IMG/VR virus record: IMGVR_UViG_3300050014_000823
Coordinates: 1-64,000 of that record
Direction: 5' to 3' (one strand)
DNA: 64,000 nt
Under the pieces are notes generated by a model that was given only the letters and a program-made list of their open reading frames with translations, had not been told where the DNA came from and did no database searches. A program made the translations under genes and the position numbers. How positions within the stretch are numbered: the first letter of the stretch is position 1; the number at the start of each line of letters is the position of its first letter. Of this stretch, positions 6-63,063 are shown piece by piece.

Positions 6-326
6 TTGAGTAAAAGTATTCGTGCTTCGATTGGTACTTGGAATTGGAAGTATTGGTTAAAGAGACTTGAAATGCAGTGTGAATTAAACCGTGTTTCGTT
101 CAGAACTGTTAGTCCTTATTATACCAGTACGACCTGTCCAGCATGTGGTCATTCCAATCGGGGGAACCGAAATGGAGAGAAGTTCTTATGTCAGAATTGT
201 GGTCACGCTGACAACGCAGATGTTAATGCAGGTAAGAACATTTTGAATCGGTTTCTCACGGGACAATACGGTGCTCGTTACAAACAGGAAAATCAAGAGA
301 ATTTAGTTGTTACTAATTTTTTGTAG
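6..326 (+). mobile_element. tnpB: 3' end of TnpB-like (IS200/IS605 or IS607) RNA-guided nuclease gene, truncated by window edge
   Basis: SPYYTSTTCPACGH..NRNGEKFLCQNCGHADNADVNAGKNIL = zinc ribbon plus RuvC-III typical of TnpB C-termini; ends in TAG. Confidence 0.85.
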
Positions 327-1379: not shown

Positions 1380-1452
1380 GCTTCCGTGACTGAATGGTTA
1401 AGGTGTCAGACTCTAAATCTGATTTGTGCAGGTTCGATTCCTGTCGGAAGTA
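1380..1452 (+). tRNA. amber suppressor tRNA, anticodon CTA (1413-1415)
   Basis: acceptor GCTTCCG/CGGAAGT, D loop with GG, anticodon stem TCAGA/TCTGA with loop CTCTAAA, T arm GCAGG-TTCGATT-CCTGT, discriminator A; no encoded CCA. Confidence 0.92.
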
Positions 1453-1473
1453 CAAAAATAATTGATAATTTGC

Positions 1474-1522
1474 TTGGAGATTAAAAATATTGTAGTAATT
1501 TTGCTCGTCATACAGTATTTAT
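1474..1522 (+). promoter_or_regulatory. tandem promoters: Bacteroidota-type TTG-N19-TAATTTTG (1474-1503) and GTATTTAT motif (1515-1522)
   Basis: both motifs recur upstream of other genes in the window. Confidence 0.55.
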
Positions 1523-1559
1523 ATATCTACGACAATTATTAACAATTAAATTTACGATT

Positions 1560-1910
1560 ATGAAGTAGGTTAAATTAGTAACAGTAACAAGAAAAGACCT
1601 GGATGCAGGTTACCAATTAGCGCAGACTATACACAGTAGTAGTCGATTTGCGTATCATTATCCCGAACTACATCGGGAATGGATTGAAAAATCCGAATAT
1701 GTTGTATCACTTTCCGTGGACAACGAAGAATCCCTCAATGACCTTTATAACAAATTAAAAAGCAATGGTGCTATTGTTGTGGCTTTTCATGAGCCAGACA
1801 TACAGGACCAGTTGACTTCTATTTGCTATTATGGTACGCCAGTAATGCGTAAGCATACGCAGAAGTTAGACTTAGCACTCAAAGAAGTTGAAGTCGCAAC
1901 TAAAAATTAA
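1560..1910 (+). CDS. peptidyl-tRNA hydrolase Pth2-like protein with in-frame TAG at codon 3 (116 aa on readthrough)
   Basis: ATG AAG TAG GTT AAA... gives MK*VKLVTVTRKDLDAGYQLAQTIHSS...WIEKSEYVVSLSV...FHEPDIQDQLTSIC; RKDL..G..AQ..H and EPD....T motifs of PTH2-like proteins; in frame with track ORF 1716-1910. Confidence 0.85.
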
Positions 1911-1932
1911 ACCCGCAATTAAATTTAAGACC

Positions 1933-1968
1933 ATGAAGCCATACTTATAGATTATCCGACCCCCATAA
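1933..1968 (+). CDS. putative leader peptide MKPYL*IIRPP with internal TAG
   Basis: ATG AAG CCA TAC TTA TAG ATT ATC CGA CCC CCA TAA, preceded by a CAATTAAATTTA initiation region like that before 1560. Confidence 0.55.
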
Positions 1969-2078
1969 TGGTGTGATTATTACCGAATTCGCAATTCGCA
2001 AATTGCGAATCAACCACAAAATCAATAAATTACACGATAAATTAACAATAATTAACAAATAAATAAATTTACACCAAT

Positions 2079-2519
2079 ATGGAAACAACAGTAAAATCAA
2101 CAAAAATGACATCACACGATAGTGCTGATTTAATTAAAGGTATTGAAACCGCCTTAGACGTAGTTCTTGAAAAGGTTACAGAAGAAGATTGGAATCTTCC
2201 ACTCATTAGTATTGACGACAAAAACTTAAATGCAAGAGTCATTCACATGACCTTAAACCAGAGAAAGAAATTAAAAAATAAACTCAATGGTTGTATATAT
2301 AAGAAGAGTCTGAGAGCAATAAACACCTTCTTACATTTCTTACACAGACATGTGCTTGAAGAAAAAACTCCTGCTCCGGAAGTCCGTATTTCTGAGAAGG
2401 AAGTTAAAATCCAAGCAACTCGTAAGAAATACGTGGAAGCACGAAACCTTGCAATAAAATTGTACAAGGAATATAAGGACGAAAAGGGCGATTTTTACAA
2501 AAAGAAAATGGCTAAATAA
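2079..2519 (+). CDS. hypothetical basic protein
   Basis: 146 aa ORF with A-rich leader, followed by terminator. Confidence 0.75.
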   Translation: METTVKSTKMTSHDSADLIKGIETALDVVLEKVTEEDWNLPLISIDDKNLNARVIHMTLNQRKKLKNKLNGCIYKKSLRAINTFLHFLHRHVLEEKTPAPEVRISEKEVKIQATRKKYVEARNLAIKLYKEYKDEKGDFYKKKMAK

Positions 2520-2523
2520 TAAT

Positions 2524-2555
2524 AAAGGGGGAAAATATTAATCCCCCTTTTTTTA
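2524..2555 (+). terminator. intrinsic terminator
   Basis: AAAGGGGGA...TCCCCCTTT plus T tract. Confidence 0.8.
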
Positions 2556-32181: not shown

Positions 32182-32238
32182 TGGGTGTTAGCGCAGTGGT
32201 AGAGCGAAATGTCGGGGGTTCGATTCCCTCACACCCTA
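32182..32238 (+). ncRNA. tRNA-like RNA lacking the anticodon arm
   Basis: GGGTGT/ACACCC acceptor, D arm GCGC-AGTGGTA-GAGC, only GAAATGTC before T arm GGGGG-TTCGATT-CCCTC. Confidence 0.75.
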
Positions 32239-45629: not shown

Positions 45630-47407
45630 ATGAAAAGAGCAATAATTTTCTTAGTTGTATTTACACTATTCGTAGCATTTCTTGGTTACAGTGTTTTTGA
45701 TTCACGAAGAAAGGCAACAAATGAACTTGCTCTTAAGTACGTCAACTATAATGACATCAATGGTGATATGATATTTACTGATGATGCAGGTGGCAGAGTT
45801 GTACTTACCTTTGAAGAACAGAGGAATGTCATTGATATCTTCGATAAAGCCGATGAAATTACAGAGATTTATATAAAAGAAAAGATTGAGAATTATATTG
45901 AGCGTGAATTGTTTACTTACAATGACAAGGTTTACAAGTATTATTATGTGTTTGACAATAAGCATGTCAAATCATACATATCAATTACTACCAATCAAGT
46001 TAAGGCTAATATGGAACGTCTTGGCGTTGATACAAAGCATTCGTTATTGGCGTATGATGCGTTTGACAGAACCGTTATGGTAAGCAGAATAACTAAGTTC
46101 ACTGATTATTTCAGCAGATACAAATTAGACCATTTGAGGCGCAGAAGTAAGACAGAGATAGCAAATCAGAAAGTCGAGAAAATACTTGAAAATAAACCAG
46201 TAAAACTGTAACATTCCCGGAAACTTTTCGTATAATCACACATGGCAAGCAAAAGAAAAAGAAGTACTGATTACAGAAGGGAATTGAAAGACCTTCAAGC
46301 ACAGGAGAAAGCACTGAGGGCACGCATAATTAAACATGCGGAAGAACTTTGTCAGAAATATCCGGGTGTGCGCATCGGTGAATTCTGTGTTATTGACTAC
46401 ATAAGATTTGTTGAAGACAATAACCTTACAGAAGCATTTATGGTAATGGAAGCCATTGAGAAAGACCTGGAAGCAAAGCATCCGCATAAGCAGACAGCAT
46501 TTGAATTTCCGACAGTTGTTCCTGCACCGCCAGTAGGTGAAAGATTTATCATCAGTGATGGTGTGGCTTATACAAGAAAATCGGAAGAAGAGGCTATGAA
46601 GTGTTCTAAAAGTCCCGATGGTAAACATCAGTTCGGGTTTGATGGTTCAACCTGTAGTTATTGTGGCGCAAATGTAGCATACCTTTAAAACTAAATATAT
46701 GAGAATTAAAATAAGTGAAATAGACCTGTTGACATTCAACAATTTAAAGGGTAAAATGCTCTTGAAGTCAGACACGCATAGATTATATGTCATCGCAGAC
46801 TTCAAAACAGAGGTTGTGGAAGAAACTGTGATGGAGAAACCTTCATTGTTCAAGAAAGCAGTACCTGTTCAGAAGAAACAATTGTACTTGACAGGTGTGA
46901 ATGTACACGCATGGCATTCAACAGGTAAATTCCTCGGTGACTTGACCGATGATTCAGCAGAATGGTTACTCCGGAGAGACCTGTACAGAATTCGACAGAA
47001 TTGGATTGACTTCTGTGACCAACTCAAAGCATTCGGCTTTAAAATAGCTGAAATCAATCCAGAAGCATAATTTTTAAACCTTAAAATCATATACTATGAA
47101 AGCTACAATTAAATTTATTGCATTGTTCACAGGATTTCTTTTTTCGCTGTTCCCTACAATGGCAGCATTTATATATCTGCTTTCCGGGAAGCAAGCATTC
47201 ATAGACTTTATTACAGGAATATCCTCAGAAAGATTTTGGCTGTTTGGTATACCATTGTTCATTGTAACCATGACAGCTTCTGTTTTAACTCTTATGGAAA
47301 TGATGTACTTCAAAAGTCCAGCTAAACAGGCAAAACCATTGTCCGTTGATGACCCAGACCTTGAGAAGAAAATTAAGAGATTAAATATGTTGGAAACCCA
47401 ATACTAA
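45630..47407 (+). other. four hypothetical CDS (45630-46211 and 47096-47407 membrane; 46242-46688; 46699-47070)
   Basis: ORFs after promoters 45561 and 46207. Confidence 0.65.
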
Positions 47408-60653: not shown

Positions 60654-61234
60654 TTTAATCTTCTGTTAATTTCATAAGTAAGATATGCAGTTCCACTTCC
60701 GATTAATGCTCCTGCGAGTACATCTGTAGGATAATGCACACCTAAGTCCATTCGGGAATATGCAACAGTACCTGCGTAGAAATAAGCTGGTGCAATGACA
60801 TACCATTTAGGATATTGTAAACTCAATGATGTTGCTAACATAAAGGAAGTTGAAGTGTGTCCCGAAGGAAAAGACGGGTCATTACACAGACTTCCAGATT
60901 TGTTTACAATGATGCCGGGATATGTGGTAAATGGACGTTTGCGCTTAACTAAGTATTTTAATCCTGCAGTAATACCTAAGTTAATAATTGTTCCTGTTGC
61001 CAATACACCTGCATTCCGTAATAGTTTATCATCATGATTTGCAAGTCCGAAAATTGCCATACCAACTGGTACACCTGTAATCACATACATATCAGAGTTA
61101 GACATAAACCTGTAAAACCCATCAGAAGGTTGTACTTGTGGTGAGTTGATTGAATGAAGTATACGAAAGTCTATATTCTGACTAAATAATGAAATTGGTA
61201 GAAAAAGTAATAATAGTAGAATAAGATTTTTCAC
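60638..61234 (-). CDS. PAP2-family phosphatase
   Basis: K.LVKRKRP, SFPSGH, SRMDLGVHYPTDV. Confidence 0.92.
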   Translation of the reverse strand: MKNLILLLLLFLPISLFSQNIDFRILHSINSPQVQPSDGFYRFMSNSDMYVITGVPVGMAIFGLANHDDKLLRNAGVLATGTIINLGITAGLKYLVKRKRPFTTYPGIIVNKSGSLCNDPSFPSGHTSTSFMLATSLSLQYPKWYVIAPAYFYAGTVAYSRMDLGVHYPTDVLAGALIGSGTAYLTYEINRRLKWQQH

Positions 61235-63063
61235 AACATATCTATTTTGTTAATTGTTTCGAATATTACTTGTGCGACTTGCGGGACGATTGCGTTTCCA
61301 AGTGCGGTATTTCTACCAGCGTCCAATTTTCGGGATATCCCATTAAATACTCCGTGAATTCGGGATATTGCTTCATACCAATGAAGTCCAAAAGGGTCTC
61401 CAGATAGCTGAGTGCTATGTTGTGTCCCTTCCTCTTGGCTCTTGTCGGGTACTTCTCCCAACTGCCTTCCCGTGGTGTCGGAATTAAGTTCCACTTTGGC
61501 ACGTCCGATAATCCAAACCCTCTCTCGAATGTGGTATGCTCCGACTGCACAAGCCGGCAAACCAATCGTGAGTGTTTCGTAACCTTCAGTTTCCAATTGA
61601 AGCATAATCTGTTCGTAGGCATTACCATCGTCTGTTGTAAGGAGTCCAGAAACATTCTCTGCCACAAACCATCGGGGTTTGCATTCCCGTATAACTCTGA
61701 TATAATCGTCCCAGAGATATCTTTTGTCTTCTTTGCCGAGCATTTTTCCTGCTTTACTGAAAGGTTGGCAGTTGTGGACTGCAAGTCCGTTTGCTGTATA
61801 GGTGTTGTCATCTTCAATCTCTAAATTATATACCGTCTCATTTTTTGAGACTACTGTTATTTTTTTAAACAGACACCACACATAACCATTTTCATAAAAT
61901 CCATAACGTTTAGAATTTTTATGTAGTCTAAGATGATACTGTCTTCTTTCATTTACTGTTCGACCTTCAATTATGCAAATTCTTTTTGGTTTTGCTGTTC
62001 CAAGACTAACAGGTACTTTATATACGTTTCGTGCAACCCTTGTCATATCTAATGCAAGTTGTCTGCTTACTGTTGTTACTGATGTTAATCCGTCCTTTTC
62101 ATAACCATCAGCATCCTGCCAACCATCAAAAACGGCTTTTTGTTTTTCATTTGACAATTCAAACACTAATTGGGTTAAATGCTTTCCATGCGCATACATA
62201 CCAAACTGTATCATAAACTCATATAATTCTTGATTAGTGATATGAAATTTAGTACATGTTCTTTCGACTACCTTTGCCGAACTATAACCAGCATTTACTA
62301 TATATTTTTCAAGGTTATCTGCATCATCATTTGATGTGCAAATTATTACTCGATGATTATACGAATTCTTTCTACTATTTGGTTTATTTTTATCGGGTTT
62401 TCTTTTAGAATTATTAGTCCAACCATCACCAAGATATCGTCCAACCATGTACCAAAACTCAATAGAATGGCTATCGTTGTCGTTTGGTGTGTCGAGAACA
62501 TATCCGACATAATCACCCCTTTTTAAATTTTTTGCTTCGACAAAATATGGGTCAGTAAAAAATCTGTCATAACTTCTTCTTTCACGATTAAATTTATGAT
62601 ATTGACTTCTTACATAAAATGGATGCTCTGCAGTGGTTTCTAATGCATCTGGTAATCCTTGTGCTCTGACACTATAAATTTCATTGGCTTCCCGTTTCAT
62701 TAACGACAAGACTTTCTTATAGTTACCAGTATGTGTTAAAACTGAATCTTCTAATGACACTTCATTTATTTTAACATATCCTCTTTTAGTGGCAACCAAA
62801 GTATTTTCAGTAAAACAGGGGACACCGCCTGTGATGATATCAATTCTGTTTTTCCACTGAGAAAAATCGGTTGTTGTAATGTCTTCATAAGTAATACTGT
62901 TTGGGAAGTGCGCTTTCAGCACCTGTAGGCAGAATGGTTTTATCTCACAATGAAATTCGTTGGACCAACCAACTCTTTCAGCAGCCAAATCAAAGCCGCC
63001 AATACCGCTAAAAAGAGAGCCATGTTTTAACCTATTCTTTAAGTCCAAGTTGTTGTGGGTCAT
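61231..63063 (-). CDS. dcm: C5 DNA cytosine methyltransferase containing an intein
   Basis: SLFSGIGG, GGVP|CQPFS, ENV, RERVWI, LGNAIVPQVA. Confidence 0.92.
   Translation of the reverse strand: MTHNNLDLKNRLKHGSLFSGIGGFDLAAERVGWSNEFHCEIKPFCLQVLKAHFPNSITYEDITTTDFSQWKNRIDIITGGVPCFTENTLVATKRGYVKINEVSLEDSVLTHTGNYKKVLSLMKREANEIYSVRAQGLPDALETTAEHPFYVRSQYHKFNRERRSYDRFFTDPYFVEAKNLKRGDYVGYVLDTPNDNDSHSIEFWYMVGRYLGDGWTNNSKRKPDKNKPNSRKNSYNHRVIICTSNDDADNLEKYIVNAGYSSAKVVERTCTKFHITNQELYEFMIQFGMYAHGKHLTQLVFELSNEKQKAVFDGWQDADGYEKDGLTSVTTVSRQLALDMTRVARNVYKVPVSLGTAKPKRICIIEGRTVNERRQYHLRLHKNSKRYGFYENGYVWCLFKKITVVSKNETVYNLEIEDDNTYTANGLAVHNCQPFSKAGKMLGKEDKRYLWDDYIRVIRECKPRWFVAENVSGLLTTDDGNAYEQIMLQLETEGYETLTIGLPACAVGAYHIRERVWIIGRAKVELNSDTTGRQLGEVPDKSQEEGTQHSTQLSGDPFGLHWYEAISRIHGVFNGISRKLDAGRNTALGNAIVPQVAQVIFETINKIDML
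61266..61817 (-). CDS. alternative-frame ORF nested in dcm, carrying a motif IX-like segment
   Basis: 183 codons open; LIPTP...YPEFTEYLMGYPENWT. Confidence 0.6.
   Translation of the reverse strand: MKMTTPIQQTDLQSTTANLSVKQEKCSAKKTKDISGTIISELYGNANPDGLWQRMFLDSLQQTMVMPTNRLCFNWKLKVTKHSRLVCRLVQSEHTTFERGFGLSDVPKWNLIPTPREGSWEKYPTRAKRKGHNIALSYLETLLDFIGMKQYPEFTEYLMGYPENWTLVEIPHLETQSSRKSHK
61771..62817 (-). mobile_element. intein with LAGLIDADG endonuclease (349 aa)
   Basis: CFTENT...TAEHPF...VGRYLGDG...GWQDADG...VYNLEI..NTYTANGLAVHN|C. Confidence 0.93.

What the first reader, a model, noticed from the sequence alone, without database searches (positions are those of the whole stretch)
1380..2555. Amber-gated translation module: suppressor tRNA(CUA), TAG-interrupted Pth2, TAG-containing RPP leader, downstream gene
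Seen: a complete cloverleaf with anticodon CTA. About 110 bp downstream is a full-length Pth2-like gene whose third codon is TAG. Next comes a 12-codon ORF with internal TAG ending RPP-stop, a perfect 10-bp hairpin, a 146-aa gene and one terminator. Long ORFs elsewhere read in the standard code with only a few terminal TAGs, so this is not genome-wide recoding. Known: Pth2 enzymes recycle dropped-off peptidyl-tRNA. Inference: the module is a local switch. Pth2, and perhaps the 2079 gene, would be made only when charged suppressor tRNA outcompetes RF1, giving a sensor or timer of termination state or a counter to a translation-targeting defence. I do not know a described system with this layout.
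Basis: partly seen in the sequence, partly recalled or inferred. Interest (0 to 1): 0.92.

Follow-up and report, generated by a model that had tools for sequence, protein, structure and literature searches.

The report
Suppressor-tRNA switch in giant phages
A giant phage carries its own tRNA that reads the stop codon UAG, placed next to its only two apparent clients, an enzyme gene and a tiny leader ORF that each contain one UAG; dozens of independent phage assemblies share this layout, so it looks like a natural, undescribed genetic switch.

Summary
They are a tRNA(CUA), a Pth2-like gene with TAG as codon 3, a 12-codon ORF with an internal TAG ending R-P-P-TAA, a 10-bp hairpin, a 146-aa gene and a terminator.

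None of it is chance or an assembly error. The early TAG occurs in 23 distinct phage loci and in all 65 database clusters that keep the N-terminus. A tRNA(CUA) lies within 2.6 kb wherever enough flank exists in 12 loci. A TAG-containing mini-ORF ending Pro-Pro-TAA sits beside the gene in 15 loci.

The genomes are otherwise standard code. The first 112 kb of the source contig and a complete 462-kb relative have no other in-frame TAG gene.

In the window clade, the Pro-stop end of the mini-ORF pairs with the start region of the next gene. This 12-bp helix is kept in 10 loci with compensatory changes. In another clade the same end forms the 5' arm of a terminator-like hairpin upstream of the Pth2-like gene.

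Best reading: a dedicated amber-suppression switch, direct for the Pth2-like gene and leader-mediated for its neighbour. What the switch is for is unproven. I found no prior description.

The parts
1380..1453 (+). tRNA with anticodon CUA (amber suppressor). It is the only tRNA gene in the first 112 kb of the contig.
   Evidence: ARAGORN; Rfam 62.9 bits; the only tRNA in 111,961 bp. It has no long variable arm, a G1.U72 pair and A73, and its amino-acid identity is unresolved.
1543..1553 (+). 11-mer CAATTAAATTT, 17 nt upstream of the Pth2-like ATG. Possibly a promoter or initiation-region element.
   Evidence: An exact copy lies at the same distance from the mini-ORF ATG. The function is inferred only.
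1560..1910 (+). Pth2-like ORF: M-K-TAG followed by 113 sense codons. It needs UAG read-through to be made with its first beta strand.
   Evidence: Profile search against the PDB hits Pth2 2zv3 at E = 3e-10. The AF2 model has pLDDT 94, and Foldseek gives TM 0.75-0.78 to archaeal Pth2 and human Bit1.
1566..1568 (+). Gating TAG, immediately before the first conserved residues V-K-L-V.
   Evidence: Conserved in 23 distinct loci and consistent with 65 of 65 database clusters. No read variant.
1916..1926 (+). Second copy of CAATTAAATTT, 17 nt upstream of the mini-ORF ATG.
   Evidence: The block upstream of the mini-ORF is conserved in relatives.
1933..1968 (+). Leader mini-ORF M-K-P-Y-L-TAG-I-I-R-P-P-TAA. 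The TAG is at 1948-1950 and the Pro-Pro-stop at 1960-1968.
   Evidence: TAG...R-P-P-TAA mini-ORFs occur in 10 window-clade loci and in L003. Forms ending Pro-Pro-TAA without the Arg (and E-R-P-P in L012) occur in L002, L004, L012 and L015. Only one unrelated example turned up in 1.52 Mb of strand sequence.
1963..1976 (+). 5' arm of the long-range helix: the last Pro codon, the TAA and 8-10 nt beyond.
   Evidence: Duplex energy -17.8 kcal/mol, the best of 117 start regions in the window. In register, 93% of cells pair in 10 loci, against 24-56% in shifted registers, and three positions show changes on both sides. The helix is part of the MFE fold, z = -3.5.
1987..2010 (+). Inner 10-bp hairpin (ATTCGCAATT / AATTGCGAAT), enclosed by the long-range helix.
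   Evidence: Two positions stay paired through U.G and G.U wobble in L007 and L033, which favours an RNA-level role.
2069..2082 (+). 3' arm of the long-range helix. It contains the ATG (2079-2081) of the next gene.
2079..2519 (+). 146-aa 'M-E-T-x-V-K' protein of unknown function, the putative regulated gene.
   Evidence: ORF. Homologs of 146 or 112 aa follow the mini-ORF in L032, L033, L007, L010, L043, L044, L046, L047 and L003. No Pfam, PHROG or Atlas lead.
2527..2554 (+). Terminator-like stem (GGGGG / CCCCC) followed by a T-run, closing the unit.
   Evidence: Sequence. The scan reports the same stem on the opposite strand.

Best explanation
The locus is a self-contained amber-suppression switch.

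Step 1. The phage makes a tRNA(CUA). Shown: the gene exists and is conserved next to the module.

Step 2. The Pth2-like mRNA starts M-K-UAG. Host release factor 1 would end translation after two residues. Only when the charged suppressor wins at the UAG is the 116-residue enzyme made. Shown: the UAG is conserved and no alternative start exists. Inferred: decoding by this tRNA.

Step 3. A second short ORF, M-K-P-Y-L-UAG-I-I-R-P-P-UAA, is the leader of the next gene.
- Its last Pro codon, its UAA and the next 8-10 nt pair with the start codon region of the 146-aa gene, so that gene is closed by default. Shown: the helix and its covariation.
- A ribosome released at the UAG stops about 15 nt short of the helix.
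- A ribosome that reads through reaches Pro-Pro-stop. From general knowledge, this is a slow-termination context. The paused ribosome sits on the 5' arm and frees the downstream AUG. This part is inferred.

In a sister clade the same kind of leader ends in the 5' arm of a terminator-like hairpin just upstream of the Pth2-like gene. There the leader would control Pth2 transcription, on top of the gene's own UAG.

Net effect: output follows the balance of suppressor activity against RF1.

Most likely purpose (low confidence): to supply peptidyl-tRNA recycling capacity, plus an unknown partner protein, only when UAG read-through is actually happening in the infected cell.
For: Conservation of the early TAG:
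- MK*V in the window, L007, L010, L030, L046 and L047.
- MKK*V in L008, MKKFW*V in L032, MKDK*V in L033.
- Leaders of 6 to 14 codons ahead of the TAG in L031, L043, L044 and L045.
- MT*I, MNN*I, MKN*I, MK*I, MS*I, MNN*K and MKNNH*V in the distant huge-phage clades.
- MK*I in the cultured Tenacibaculum phage pT24.
- Sources.

Database clusters: 63 of the 65 that keep the N-terminus show a 'Q' exactly at that place, and the other two start at the codon right after it. For every cluster whose DNA I fetched (six 'Q'-type or caller-start entries, plus one of the two that start just after it) that place is a TAG.

Codon after the TAG: GTT, GTA, ATT, GTC or AAA in 16 of the 17 loci tallied when I made this count, so re-initiation is unlikely.

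tRNA(CUA) linkage: within 0.02-2.6 kb in the window, L003 (two copies), LR756500, L008, L015, L018, L044-L048 and pT24.

Standard code elsewhere:
- Complete 462-kb LR756500 has 4 TAG sites with coding both sides, against 18 for TGA and 47 for TAA, which is the level expected from chance adjacency of genes. It has exactly one early-TAG gene, the Pth2-like one.
- The source contig, positions 1-111,961, has none apart from 1566.

Mini-ORF: 15 loci, with synonymous variation in the Arg and Pro codons, against a background of one in 1.52 Mb.

Leader-to-start helix.

Sister-clade hairpins: they begin at the Pro-Pro codons, fold with z = -4.8 to -7.5, and are followed by a U-rich tract.

Pth2 fold.
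Against: - There is no expression, proteomic or ribosome-profiling evidence. The one RNA run holds only short contigs of relatives and could contain DNA.
- The suppressor's amino-acid identity is unknown and differs between clades.
- Three 630-640-kb genomes with a TAG-Pth2 have no tRNA(CUA) within 20 kb either side. Their whole genomes were not scanned.
- Four clades with a TAG-Pth2 lack a recognisable Pro-Pro-stop mini-ORF.
- The catalytic Lys of canonical Pth2 is not conserved, so hydrolase activity is unproven.
- In L031, L043, L044 and the mycobacteriophages a GTG follows the TAG and could serve as an independent start.
- About 187 kb of the source contig was not examined.
- TAG-terminated genes show no excess of backup stops.
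Confidence: 0.6

Rival explanations
1. This is ordinary code-15 recoding. The phage reassigns TAG in its late genes, and the two TAG ORFs here are just the edge of a recoded genome.
For: Phage TAG recoding with suppressor tRNAs is well known (Borges preprint; Al-Shayeb 2020). The window holds only early-type genes. L003 and L018 have a second TAG inside their Pth2-like gene. About 187 kb of the source contig is unseen.
Against: The complete 462-kb LR756500 has no recoded genes beyond the Pth2-like gene. The 112 kb of the source contig has none. Dispersed recoding does not predict a TAG fixed just before the domain across clades at about 30% identity.
Confidence: 0.1
2. The TAGs are true stops. 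ATG-X-TAG is a two- or three-codon minigene or uORF, and the Pth2-like protein is made by termination-reinitiation at the next codon. The tRNA(CUA) would serve something else.
For: ATT follows the TAG in seven loci and GTG in a few. From general knowledge, lambda bar minigenes link very short ORFs to peptidyl-tRNA drop-off and to Pth. The mycobacteriophage genes have a Shine-Dalgarno sequence at good spacing for the GTG after the TAG.
Against: In the window clade the next codon is GTT or GTA, and elsewhere GTC or AAA. None of these is a start codon. The pre-TAG peptide is conserved in one sub-clade (D-T-G-S-G-S-P), which suggests it is part of a product. The mini-ORF shows peptide-level conservation downstream of its TAG. 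The tight tRNA(CUA) linkage would be left unexplained.
Confidence: 0.12
3. The TAG reflects a pseudogene, a sequencing error or strain polymorphism.
For: Taken alone, a nonsense codon at codon 3 looks like damage.
Against: There is no variant in two DNA runs. The same feature appears in more than 20 independent assemblies, three cultured phage genomes and 65 protein clusters. The rest of the ORF is intact and under clear purifying selection.
Confidence: 0.01
4. The region between the mini-ORF and the 2079 gene is a protein-bound DNA operator (the repeated ATTCGCA / TGCGAAT half-sites). On this view the long-range RNA helix is incidental and the control is transcriptional.
For: Repeated inverted half-sites, varying in number and spacing, lie between the leader and the gene in all window-clade loci.
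Against: The two substitutions in the inner stem keep pairing only as U.G and G.U, which matters for RNA and not for duplex DNA. The outer helix has A-U to G-C and G-C to A-U double changes and always contains the stop codon and the start codon. The two readings are not exclusive.
Confidence: 0.15

Closest known systems
Stop-codon-recoded (code 15) phages and their 'code change module' of suppressor tRNA, aaRS and release factor (Borges et al., bioRxiv 10.1101/2021.08.26.457843; Yutin et al. 2021, PMC7886860)
   Same: A phage-encoded suppressor tRNA is proposed to license translation of genes that carry in-frame stop codons in a standard-code host.
   Different: There, tens to hundreds of late genes are recoded and standard-code coding density drops. 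Here the genome is standard code with only two tiny clients beside the tRNA. One client is a regulatory leader ORF, and the gating codon sits at a fixed place ahead of the domain. No Pth or leader peptide is mentioned in that paper.
Leader-peptide attenuators and arrest peptides such as TnaC, which ends R-P-stop (own knowledge)
   Same: A short upstream ORF whose ribosome, paused at a Pro-stop end, remodels an mRNA structure that controls the downstream gene.
   Different: The input here would be read-through of a stop codon by a dedicated tRNA, not a small molecule or a hungry sense codon. Stalling has not been shown.
prfB (RF2) autoregulation by an early in-frame UGA (own knowledge)
   Same: An early in-frame stop codon makes output depend on how efficiently termination works at that codon.
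   Different: No frameshift is needed here. The competitor is a suppressor tRNA. The product is not the release factor that reads the codon.
Synthetic amber-codon leader peptides for attenuation control by orthogonal suppressor tRNAs (own knowledge; reviewed in PMC6412442, which was listed but not read)
   Same: UAG codons placed in a leader peptide make downstream expression depend on a charged amber suppressor.
   Different: Those are engineered devices. This would be a natural counterpart.
Orphan tRNA(CUA) genes in standard-code jumbo phages, for example XacN1 (PMC5852040)
   Same: A standard-code jumbo phage that carries CUA suppressor tRNAs and a peptidyl-tRNA hydrolase. The authors could find no target for the suppressors.
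   Different: XacN1's enzyme is a canonical PTH2 (116 bits) with a normal start and no TAG. The present module offers targets of a kind that their search of terminal stop codons would have missed.
Phage PTH2 genes in jumbo phages (Iyer et al. 2021, PMC7824862)
   Same: PTH2-family genes are known in jumbo phages and are proposed to recycle peptidyl-tRNA during ribosome rescue.
   Different: That paper mentions neither an early TAG nor a tRNA(CUA) linkage. The gated genes form a divergent subfamily scoring only 18-36 bits on Pfam.

Membership tests
PTH2 peptidyl-tRNA hydrolase (PF01981) | Sequence match above the Pfam gathering score | tested here: met
   25.9 bits against a cut-off of 23 for residues 2-75 of the post-TAG piece. 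Profile search against the PDB hits 2zv3 at E = 2.9e-10.
PTH2 peptidyl-tRNA hydrolase (PF01981) | Pth2 alpha/beta fold | tested here: met
   AF2 model with pLDDT 94.1. Foldseek gives TM 0.75-0.78 and rmsd 2.3-2.6 A to 2zv3, 3erj and 1q7s.
PTH2 peptidyl-tRNA hydrolase (PF01981) | Conserved catalytic residues (Lys of the G-K-G-K loop, His, Asp) | tested here: inconclusive
   The His is kept (H22 is invariant). An invariant Glu (E75) aligns with the Asp. The Lys position is Y, Q, T, V or L.
PTH2 peptidyl-tRNA hydrolase (PF01981) | Hydrolysis of peptidyl-tRNA | not testable with these tools
   This needs an enzyme assay.
Code-15 (TAG-recoded) phage | Phage-encoded tRNA(CUA) | tested here: met
Code-15 (TAG-recoded) phage | Many genes with in-frame TAG, and low coding density under the standard code | tested here: not met
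   Standard-code ORFs cover 88% of the window. No in-frame-like TAG in 112 kb of the source contig. The complete relative LR756500 is at background level. The remaining 187 kb or so of the contig was not tested.
Ribosome-dependent leader-peptide regulator (attenuator / arrest-peptide class) | A short conserved ORF directly upstream of the regulated gene | tested here: met
   Mini-ORF found in 15 loci, lying 97-150 nt upstream of the ME-type gene in ten of them (63 nt upstream of an inserted HNH endonuclease gene in L008) or about 100 nt upstream of the Pth2-like gene in the sister clade.
Ribosome-dependent leader-peptide regulator (attenuator / arrest-peptide class) | An mRNA structure that overlaps the leader's end and occludes the downstream start site or forms a terminator | tested here: met
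   A 12-bp helix between the leader's stop region and the start region, with covariation. Terminator-like hairpins with z = -4.8 to -7.5 in the sister clade.
Ribosome-dependent leader-peptide regulator (attenuator / arrest-peptide class) | Demonstrated ribosome pausing and a regulatory effect | not testable with these tools
   This needs toeprinting, Ribo-seq or reporter assays.
prfB-type autoregulatory in-frame stop | A frameshift is required past the stop, and the product is the factor that reads that stop | tested here: not met
   The domain is in the zero frame with the ATG and the TAG, and the product has a Pth2 fold, not a release-factor fold.
Lambda bar-type minigene | A free-standing two- or three-codon ORF with no in-frame continuation | tested here: not met
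   A conserved 113-codon domain continues in frame directly after the TAG.

The most novel reading that the evidence does not exclude
Huge and jumbo phages with standard-code genomes carry a natural three-part translational circuit:
- a dedicated amber-suppressor tRNA;
- a UAG-gated Pth2-like enzyme;
- a UAG-containing leader peptide ending Pro-Pro-stop, which opens an mRNA helix or terminator only after read-through.

The circuit would measure the balance of suppressor against RF1 inside the infected cell. It would be the first natural leader peptide that senses stop-codon read-through. It would also explain why 'orphan' suppressor tRNAs persist in phages that do not recode their genes, possibly as the seed from which full TAG recoding evolves.
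Probability: 0.5. Interest if true: 0.88.

Novelty: new variant of a known kind. Interest (0 to 1): 0.85.

Why it matters
Suppressor tRNAs in phages with standard-code genomes have had no known targets. The XacN1 authors say so explicitly. This module supplies targets, and gene callers and annotators systematically miss or truncate them. The pT24 CDS starts internally. JGI and NCBI calls start after the TAG or at internal Met codons. Other callers read the TAG as 'Q'.

If the model holds, four things follow.
- It is a natural example of gene control by stop-codon read-through through a leader peptide, a design so far known, to my knowledge, only from synthetic biology.
- It ties peptidyl-tRNA recycling to suppression.
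- It gives a plausible stepping stone between standard-code and TAG-recoded phages.
- It provides compact, portable parts (tRNA, gate, leader and helix) that can be tested in cultured systems such as Tenacibaculum phage pT24.

Tried and rejected
- Megablast of 6 kb against GenBank phages found nothing.
- The alignment-based scan of the viral collection failed for lack of a conserved block, so I used single-protein scans instead.
- Rfam at permissive thresholds found only the tRNA in 1300-2100. There is no ribozyme or known cis-element next to it.
- Comparing the tRNA(CUA) with 70 phage tRNAs did not reveal a parent isoacceptor.
- The XacN1 peptidyl-tRNA hydrolase is canonical and has no gate, so not every phage with a CUA tRNA uses this module.
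- Backup-stop statistics after TAG-terminated genes were uninformative.
- The 146-aa and 112-aa proteins have no family, PHROG or Atlas lead.
- Frameshifting or hopping past the TAG is rejected because the domain is in the zero frame.
- The Borges preprint could be searched, but the published Nature Microbiology version was not held.
- The sigma-70 promoter scan found no enrichment.
Full report
**Source and observation**

The window is the first 64 kb of a 299,144-bp viral contig from a peat metagenome. The contig is IMGVR_UViG_3300050014_000823, which is JGI 3300050014 Ga0494704_000008.

- The tRNA with anticodon CTA is at 1380-1453 (ARAGORN; Rfam 62.9 bits).
- 106 nt downstream an ORF begins ATG-AAG-TAG at 1560-1568 and then runs 113 sense codons to TAA 1908-1910.
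- The post-TAG piece passes Pfam PTH2 from profile position 2, so the domain starts right at the TAG.
- No ATG, GTG or TTG lies before GTG 1716, which is 49 codons into the domain.
- The mini-ORF at 1933-1968 reads M-K-P-Y-L-TAG-I-I-R-P-P-TAA.
- It is followed by a perfect 10-bp hairpin (1987-2010), the 146-aa ORF (2079-2519) and a GC stem with a T-run (2527-2554).

**Error or local recoding?**

Two DNA runs hold the stretch without a variant at either TAG.

The window is 88% covered by standard-code ORFs. Their stop codons are 89 TAA, 21 TGA and 7 TAG.

A codon-usage test found no TAG with coding potential on both sides. I walked the source contig out to position 111,961 and got the same result. 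The only early-TAG ORF is the one at 1566, and the CUA tRNA is the only tRNA gene in those 112 kb.

The window's genes are of the early and nucleotide-metabolism type: RIIA, a helicase, a DNA polymerase fragment and an intein-containing methyltransferase. A recoded late region further along the contig therefore cannot be excluded for this genome.

**The Pth2-like gene in relatives**

tblastn against GenBank phages put the closest relatives in the 462-735-kb uncultured phages LR756500-LR756504 and LR745206. Next came cluster C mycobacteriophages and Tenacibaculum phage pT24.

In all five huge phages the homolog starts ATG, one or two codons, TAG, and then the domain. The same holds for:
- every relative fetched from IMG/VR;
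- ENA, Logan, JGI and NCBI assemblies;
- three contigs binned into 'MAGs';
- pT24, where the deposited CDS starts at an internal codon.

That makes 23 distinct loci.

A search of the 5.8-billion-protein collection returned 115 clusters of the window's clade. Of the 65 that keep the first beta strand, 63 carry a 'Q' immediately before V/I-K-L-V, and two begin at that V. For every cluster whose DNA I fetched, that place is a TAG. The 'Q' is therefore what a code-15 gene caller writes for it.

The peptide before the TAG varies from 1 to about 26 residues. The codon before the TAG varies too. The codon after it is GTT, GTA, ATT, GTC or AAA in 16 of the 17 loci tallied when I made this count.

Two exceptions or ambiguities:
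- L016 (27% identity) has no early stop, and the tRNA next to it reads UGA instead.
- In mycobacteriophages IkeLoa and Myrna a TAG sits directly before the annotated GTG start, inside the Shine-Dalgarno spacer. Gating is therefore ambiguous there, yet a tRNA(CUA) lies 130-250 nt downstream.

**Linkage to the tRNA**

A tRNA(CUA) lies within 0.02-2.6 kb of the gated gene in the window, L003 (two copies), LR756500, L008, L015, L018, L044, L045, L046, L047, L048 and pT24. Most other loci are contigs too short to tell.

Three 630-640-kb genomes have none within 20 kb either side, and their whole genomes were not scanned.

The suppressor tRNAs differ in acceptor stem and discriminator base, and none resembles a particular isoacceptor. 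Both TAGs lie outside folded or conserved segments. This fits a gate in which the inserted residue does not matter.

**A complete genome as control**

I fetched all 462,018 bp of LR756500.
- TAG sites with coding potential on both sides number 4, against 18 for TGA and 47 for TAA. That is what chance same-frame adjacency of genes gives.
- A genome-wide search for ATG, up to 8 codons, a stop, then a long start-less coding frame returns exactly one TAG case, the Pth2-like gene.
- The genome has 26 tRNAs, one of them CUA, lying 780 nt downstream of that gene.

A standard-code giant phage therefore keeps an amber suppressor whose only evident protein client is this gene.

**The enzyme**

A profile of the family hits archaeal Pth2 structures, 2zv3 at E = 2.9e-10. 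An AlphaFold2 model (pLDDT 94) superposes on Pth2 and Bit1 at TM 0.75-0.78.

The family is a divergent branch, scoring only 18-36 bits on Pfam, whereas XacN1's canonical PTH2 scores 116 bits. Residues Q19, H22, W38, E75 and T83 are invariant. The Lys of the canonical G-K-G-K loop is not kept. The fold is established, but the activity is not.

**The mini-ORF**

It is conserved. These loci have M, 2-4 codons, TAG, 3 codons, R-P-P-TAA:

| Locus | Peptide |
|---|---|
| Window | MKPYL*IIRPP* |
| L032 | MKHFL*IIRPP* |
| L033, L046 | MRHL* / MKHL*MTTRPP* |
| L007 | MKDK*IQIRPP* |
| L010 | MKDT*FTARPP* |
| L008, L043 | MKDT*IDIRPP* |
| L044 | MKHL*IDIRPP* |
| L047 | MKDK*INIRPP* |
| L003 (the 735-kb phage) | MS*SRPP* |

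The Arg and Pro codons vary synonymously.

In another clade the mini-ORF lies about 100 nt upstream of the Pth2-like gene. It reads MM*INTYYNFVVVPP* in L002, MN*IKTYKNLVVKPP* in L004 and MM*ILTYNNLERPP* in L012. L015 has MKKIKEQL*VFDILNVPP*.

All of them end Pro-Pro-TAA. In 1.52 Mb of strand sequence from these phages only one unrelated TAG-containing mini-ORF ends Pro-Pro-stop.

**What the mini-ORF touches**

RNAalifold proposed a pairing between the leader's end and the start region of the next gene. Anchoring the leader at its TAA and the gene at its ATG gives a 12-bp helix at leader positions -3 to +8.
- 93% of cells pair across 10 loci, against 24-56% in shifted registers.
- Three positions change on both sides: A-U to G-C at two positions in the window, and G-C to A-U in L010 and L043.
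- In the window the duplex energy is -17.8 kcal/mol. It is the best of 117 start regions, and only 0.2% of all 24-mers do as well.
- It is part of the minimum-energy fold (z = -3.5), where it encloses the 10-bp hairpin.

The helix contains the last Pro codon, the leader's stop codon and the downstream AUG. The UAG lies 5-6 codons upstream of the stop (4 in L003). A ribosome released at the UAG would therefore not reach the helix, whereas one paused at Pro-Pro-stop would cover its 5' arm. This is an inference from typical ribosome footprints.

In L008 an HNH endonuclease gene is inserted after the leader, and the pairing there is weak.

In the L002, L004 and L012 clade the C-C-U-C-C-U-U-A-A end of the leader is the 5' arm of a long hairpin. 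It folds at -26 to -30 kcal/mol, z = -4.8 to -7.5, with a U-rich tract after it, about 35 nt ahead of the Pth2-like ATG. This looks like a leader-controlled terminator.

**Interpretation**

The simplest account of all this is a dedicated amber-suppression switch. The tRNA(CUA) competes with host RF1 at two UAGs. One gates the Pth2-like protein directly. The other decides whether a ribosome reaches a slow Pro-Pro-stop end and opens a structure that closes the neighbouring gene, or, in the sister clade, terminates transcription ahead of the Pth2-like gene.

Slow termination after Pro-Pro and drop-off of short peptidyl-tRNA(Pro) are established for E. coli (own knowledge). This offers a rationale for pairing such a leader with a peptidyl-tRNA hydrolase, but that link is speculative.

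Purposes that remain open:
- matching recycling capacity to read-through load;
- timing, through maturation of the tRNA;
- sensing RF1 activity;
- a lock that keeps these genes silent outside the infected cell.

**Prior knowledge**

- PTH2 genes in jumbo phages are known (PMC7824862).
- TAG recoding and 'code change modules' are known.
- XacN1's authors reported CUA suppressors with no identifiable target.
- Searches combining suppressor tRNA, peptidyl-tRNA hydrolase, leader peptide, phage and amber found no description of this layout. The held library does not include most subscription journals.

I rate the finding a new variant of known kinds (read-through gating plus leader-peptide control) with high interest.

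**Limits**

- There are no expression data.
- About 187 kb of the source contig is unseen.
- The suppressor's identity is unknown.
- The module is incomplete in some clades.

Noticed in passing
window 32182-32238 (+): A tRNA-like element (Rfam tRNA 36.9 bits) with acceptor, D and T arms, but with the anticodon arm replaced by 2 nt. ARAGORN does not call it.
   Followed up: no
window 6-326 (+): A C-terminal TnpB / Cas12f-like TNB zinc-ribbon fragment at the very start of the contig (Pfam PF07282, 66 bits). Logan contigs also break near here.
   Followed up: no
window 61231-63063 (-): A DNA methyltransferase gene interrupted by an intein. The precomputed Pfam hits are DNA_methylase, Intein_splicing/Hint, DNA_methylase.
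   Followed up: no
window 1543-1553, 1916-1926 and 47106-47116 (+): The exact 11-mer CAATTAAATTT lies 17 nt upstream of both UAG-ORF start codons, with a third copy at 47106. This may be a shared promoter or initiation element, although the motif count over the whole window is not significant.
   Followed up: partly
L031, L043, L044; proteins P0001, P0002, P0018, P0019, P0031, P0037: A sub-clade has a 12-16-residue conserved peptide ahead of the TAG (M-K-x-x-F/L-A/M-D-T/G-G-x-G-S-P/D-x-TAG). The pre-TAG leader is therefore under peptide-level selection there.
   Followed up: partly
L015 (1712-4390) and L016 (4421-4493): L015 carries a tRNA(UUA) and a tRNA with an 8-nt anticodon loop as well as the tRNA(CUA). 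L016 has a Pth2-like gene without a TAG, and a tRNA(UCA) follows directly after it.
   Followed up: no
L035 (IkeLoa) and L037 (Myrna): In cluster C mycobacteriophages the peptidyl-tRNA hydrolase gene has a TAG directly before its annotated GTG start and a tRNA(CUA) 130-250 nt downstream. Myrna's tRNA is annotated as tRNA-Ser.
   Followed up: partly
L036 / L042 (Tenacibaculum phage pT24, BPT24_235): The deposited CDS starts about 43 codons inside the Pth2-like domain, because the true N-terminus is MK-TAG. The ORF also continues into a C-terminal extension of about 200 residues. A tRNA-Sup gene lies 2.5 kb upstream.
   Followed up: partly
L046-L048: Contigs filed as Paceibacterota, Patescibacteria and archaeon MAGs carry the phage module. 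The 362-kb one is probably a mis-binned huge phage.
   Followed up: no
L008 5422-6195: An HNH homing-endonuclease gene is inserted between the mini-ORF and the ME-type gene.
   Followed up: no
source contig 64-112 kb (L049, L051-L053): This stretch holds many RNA-repair and translation-related genes: two RNA ligases, Thg1, peptide deformylase and NADAR, plus several GIY-YIG, LAGLIDADG and NUMOD homing-endonuclease genes.
   Followed up: no
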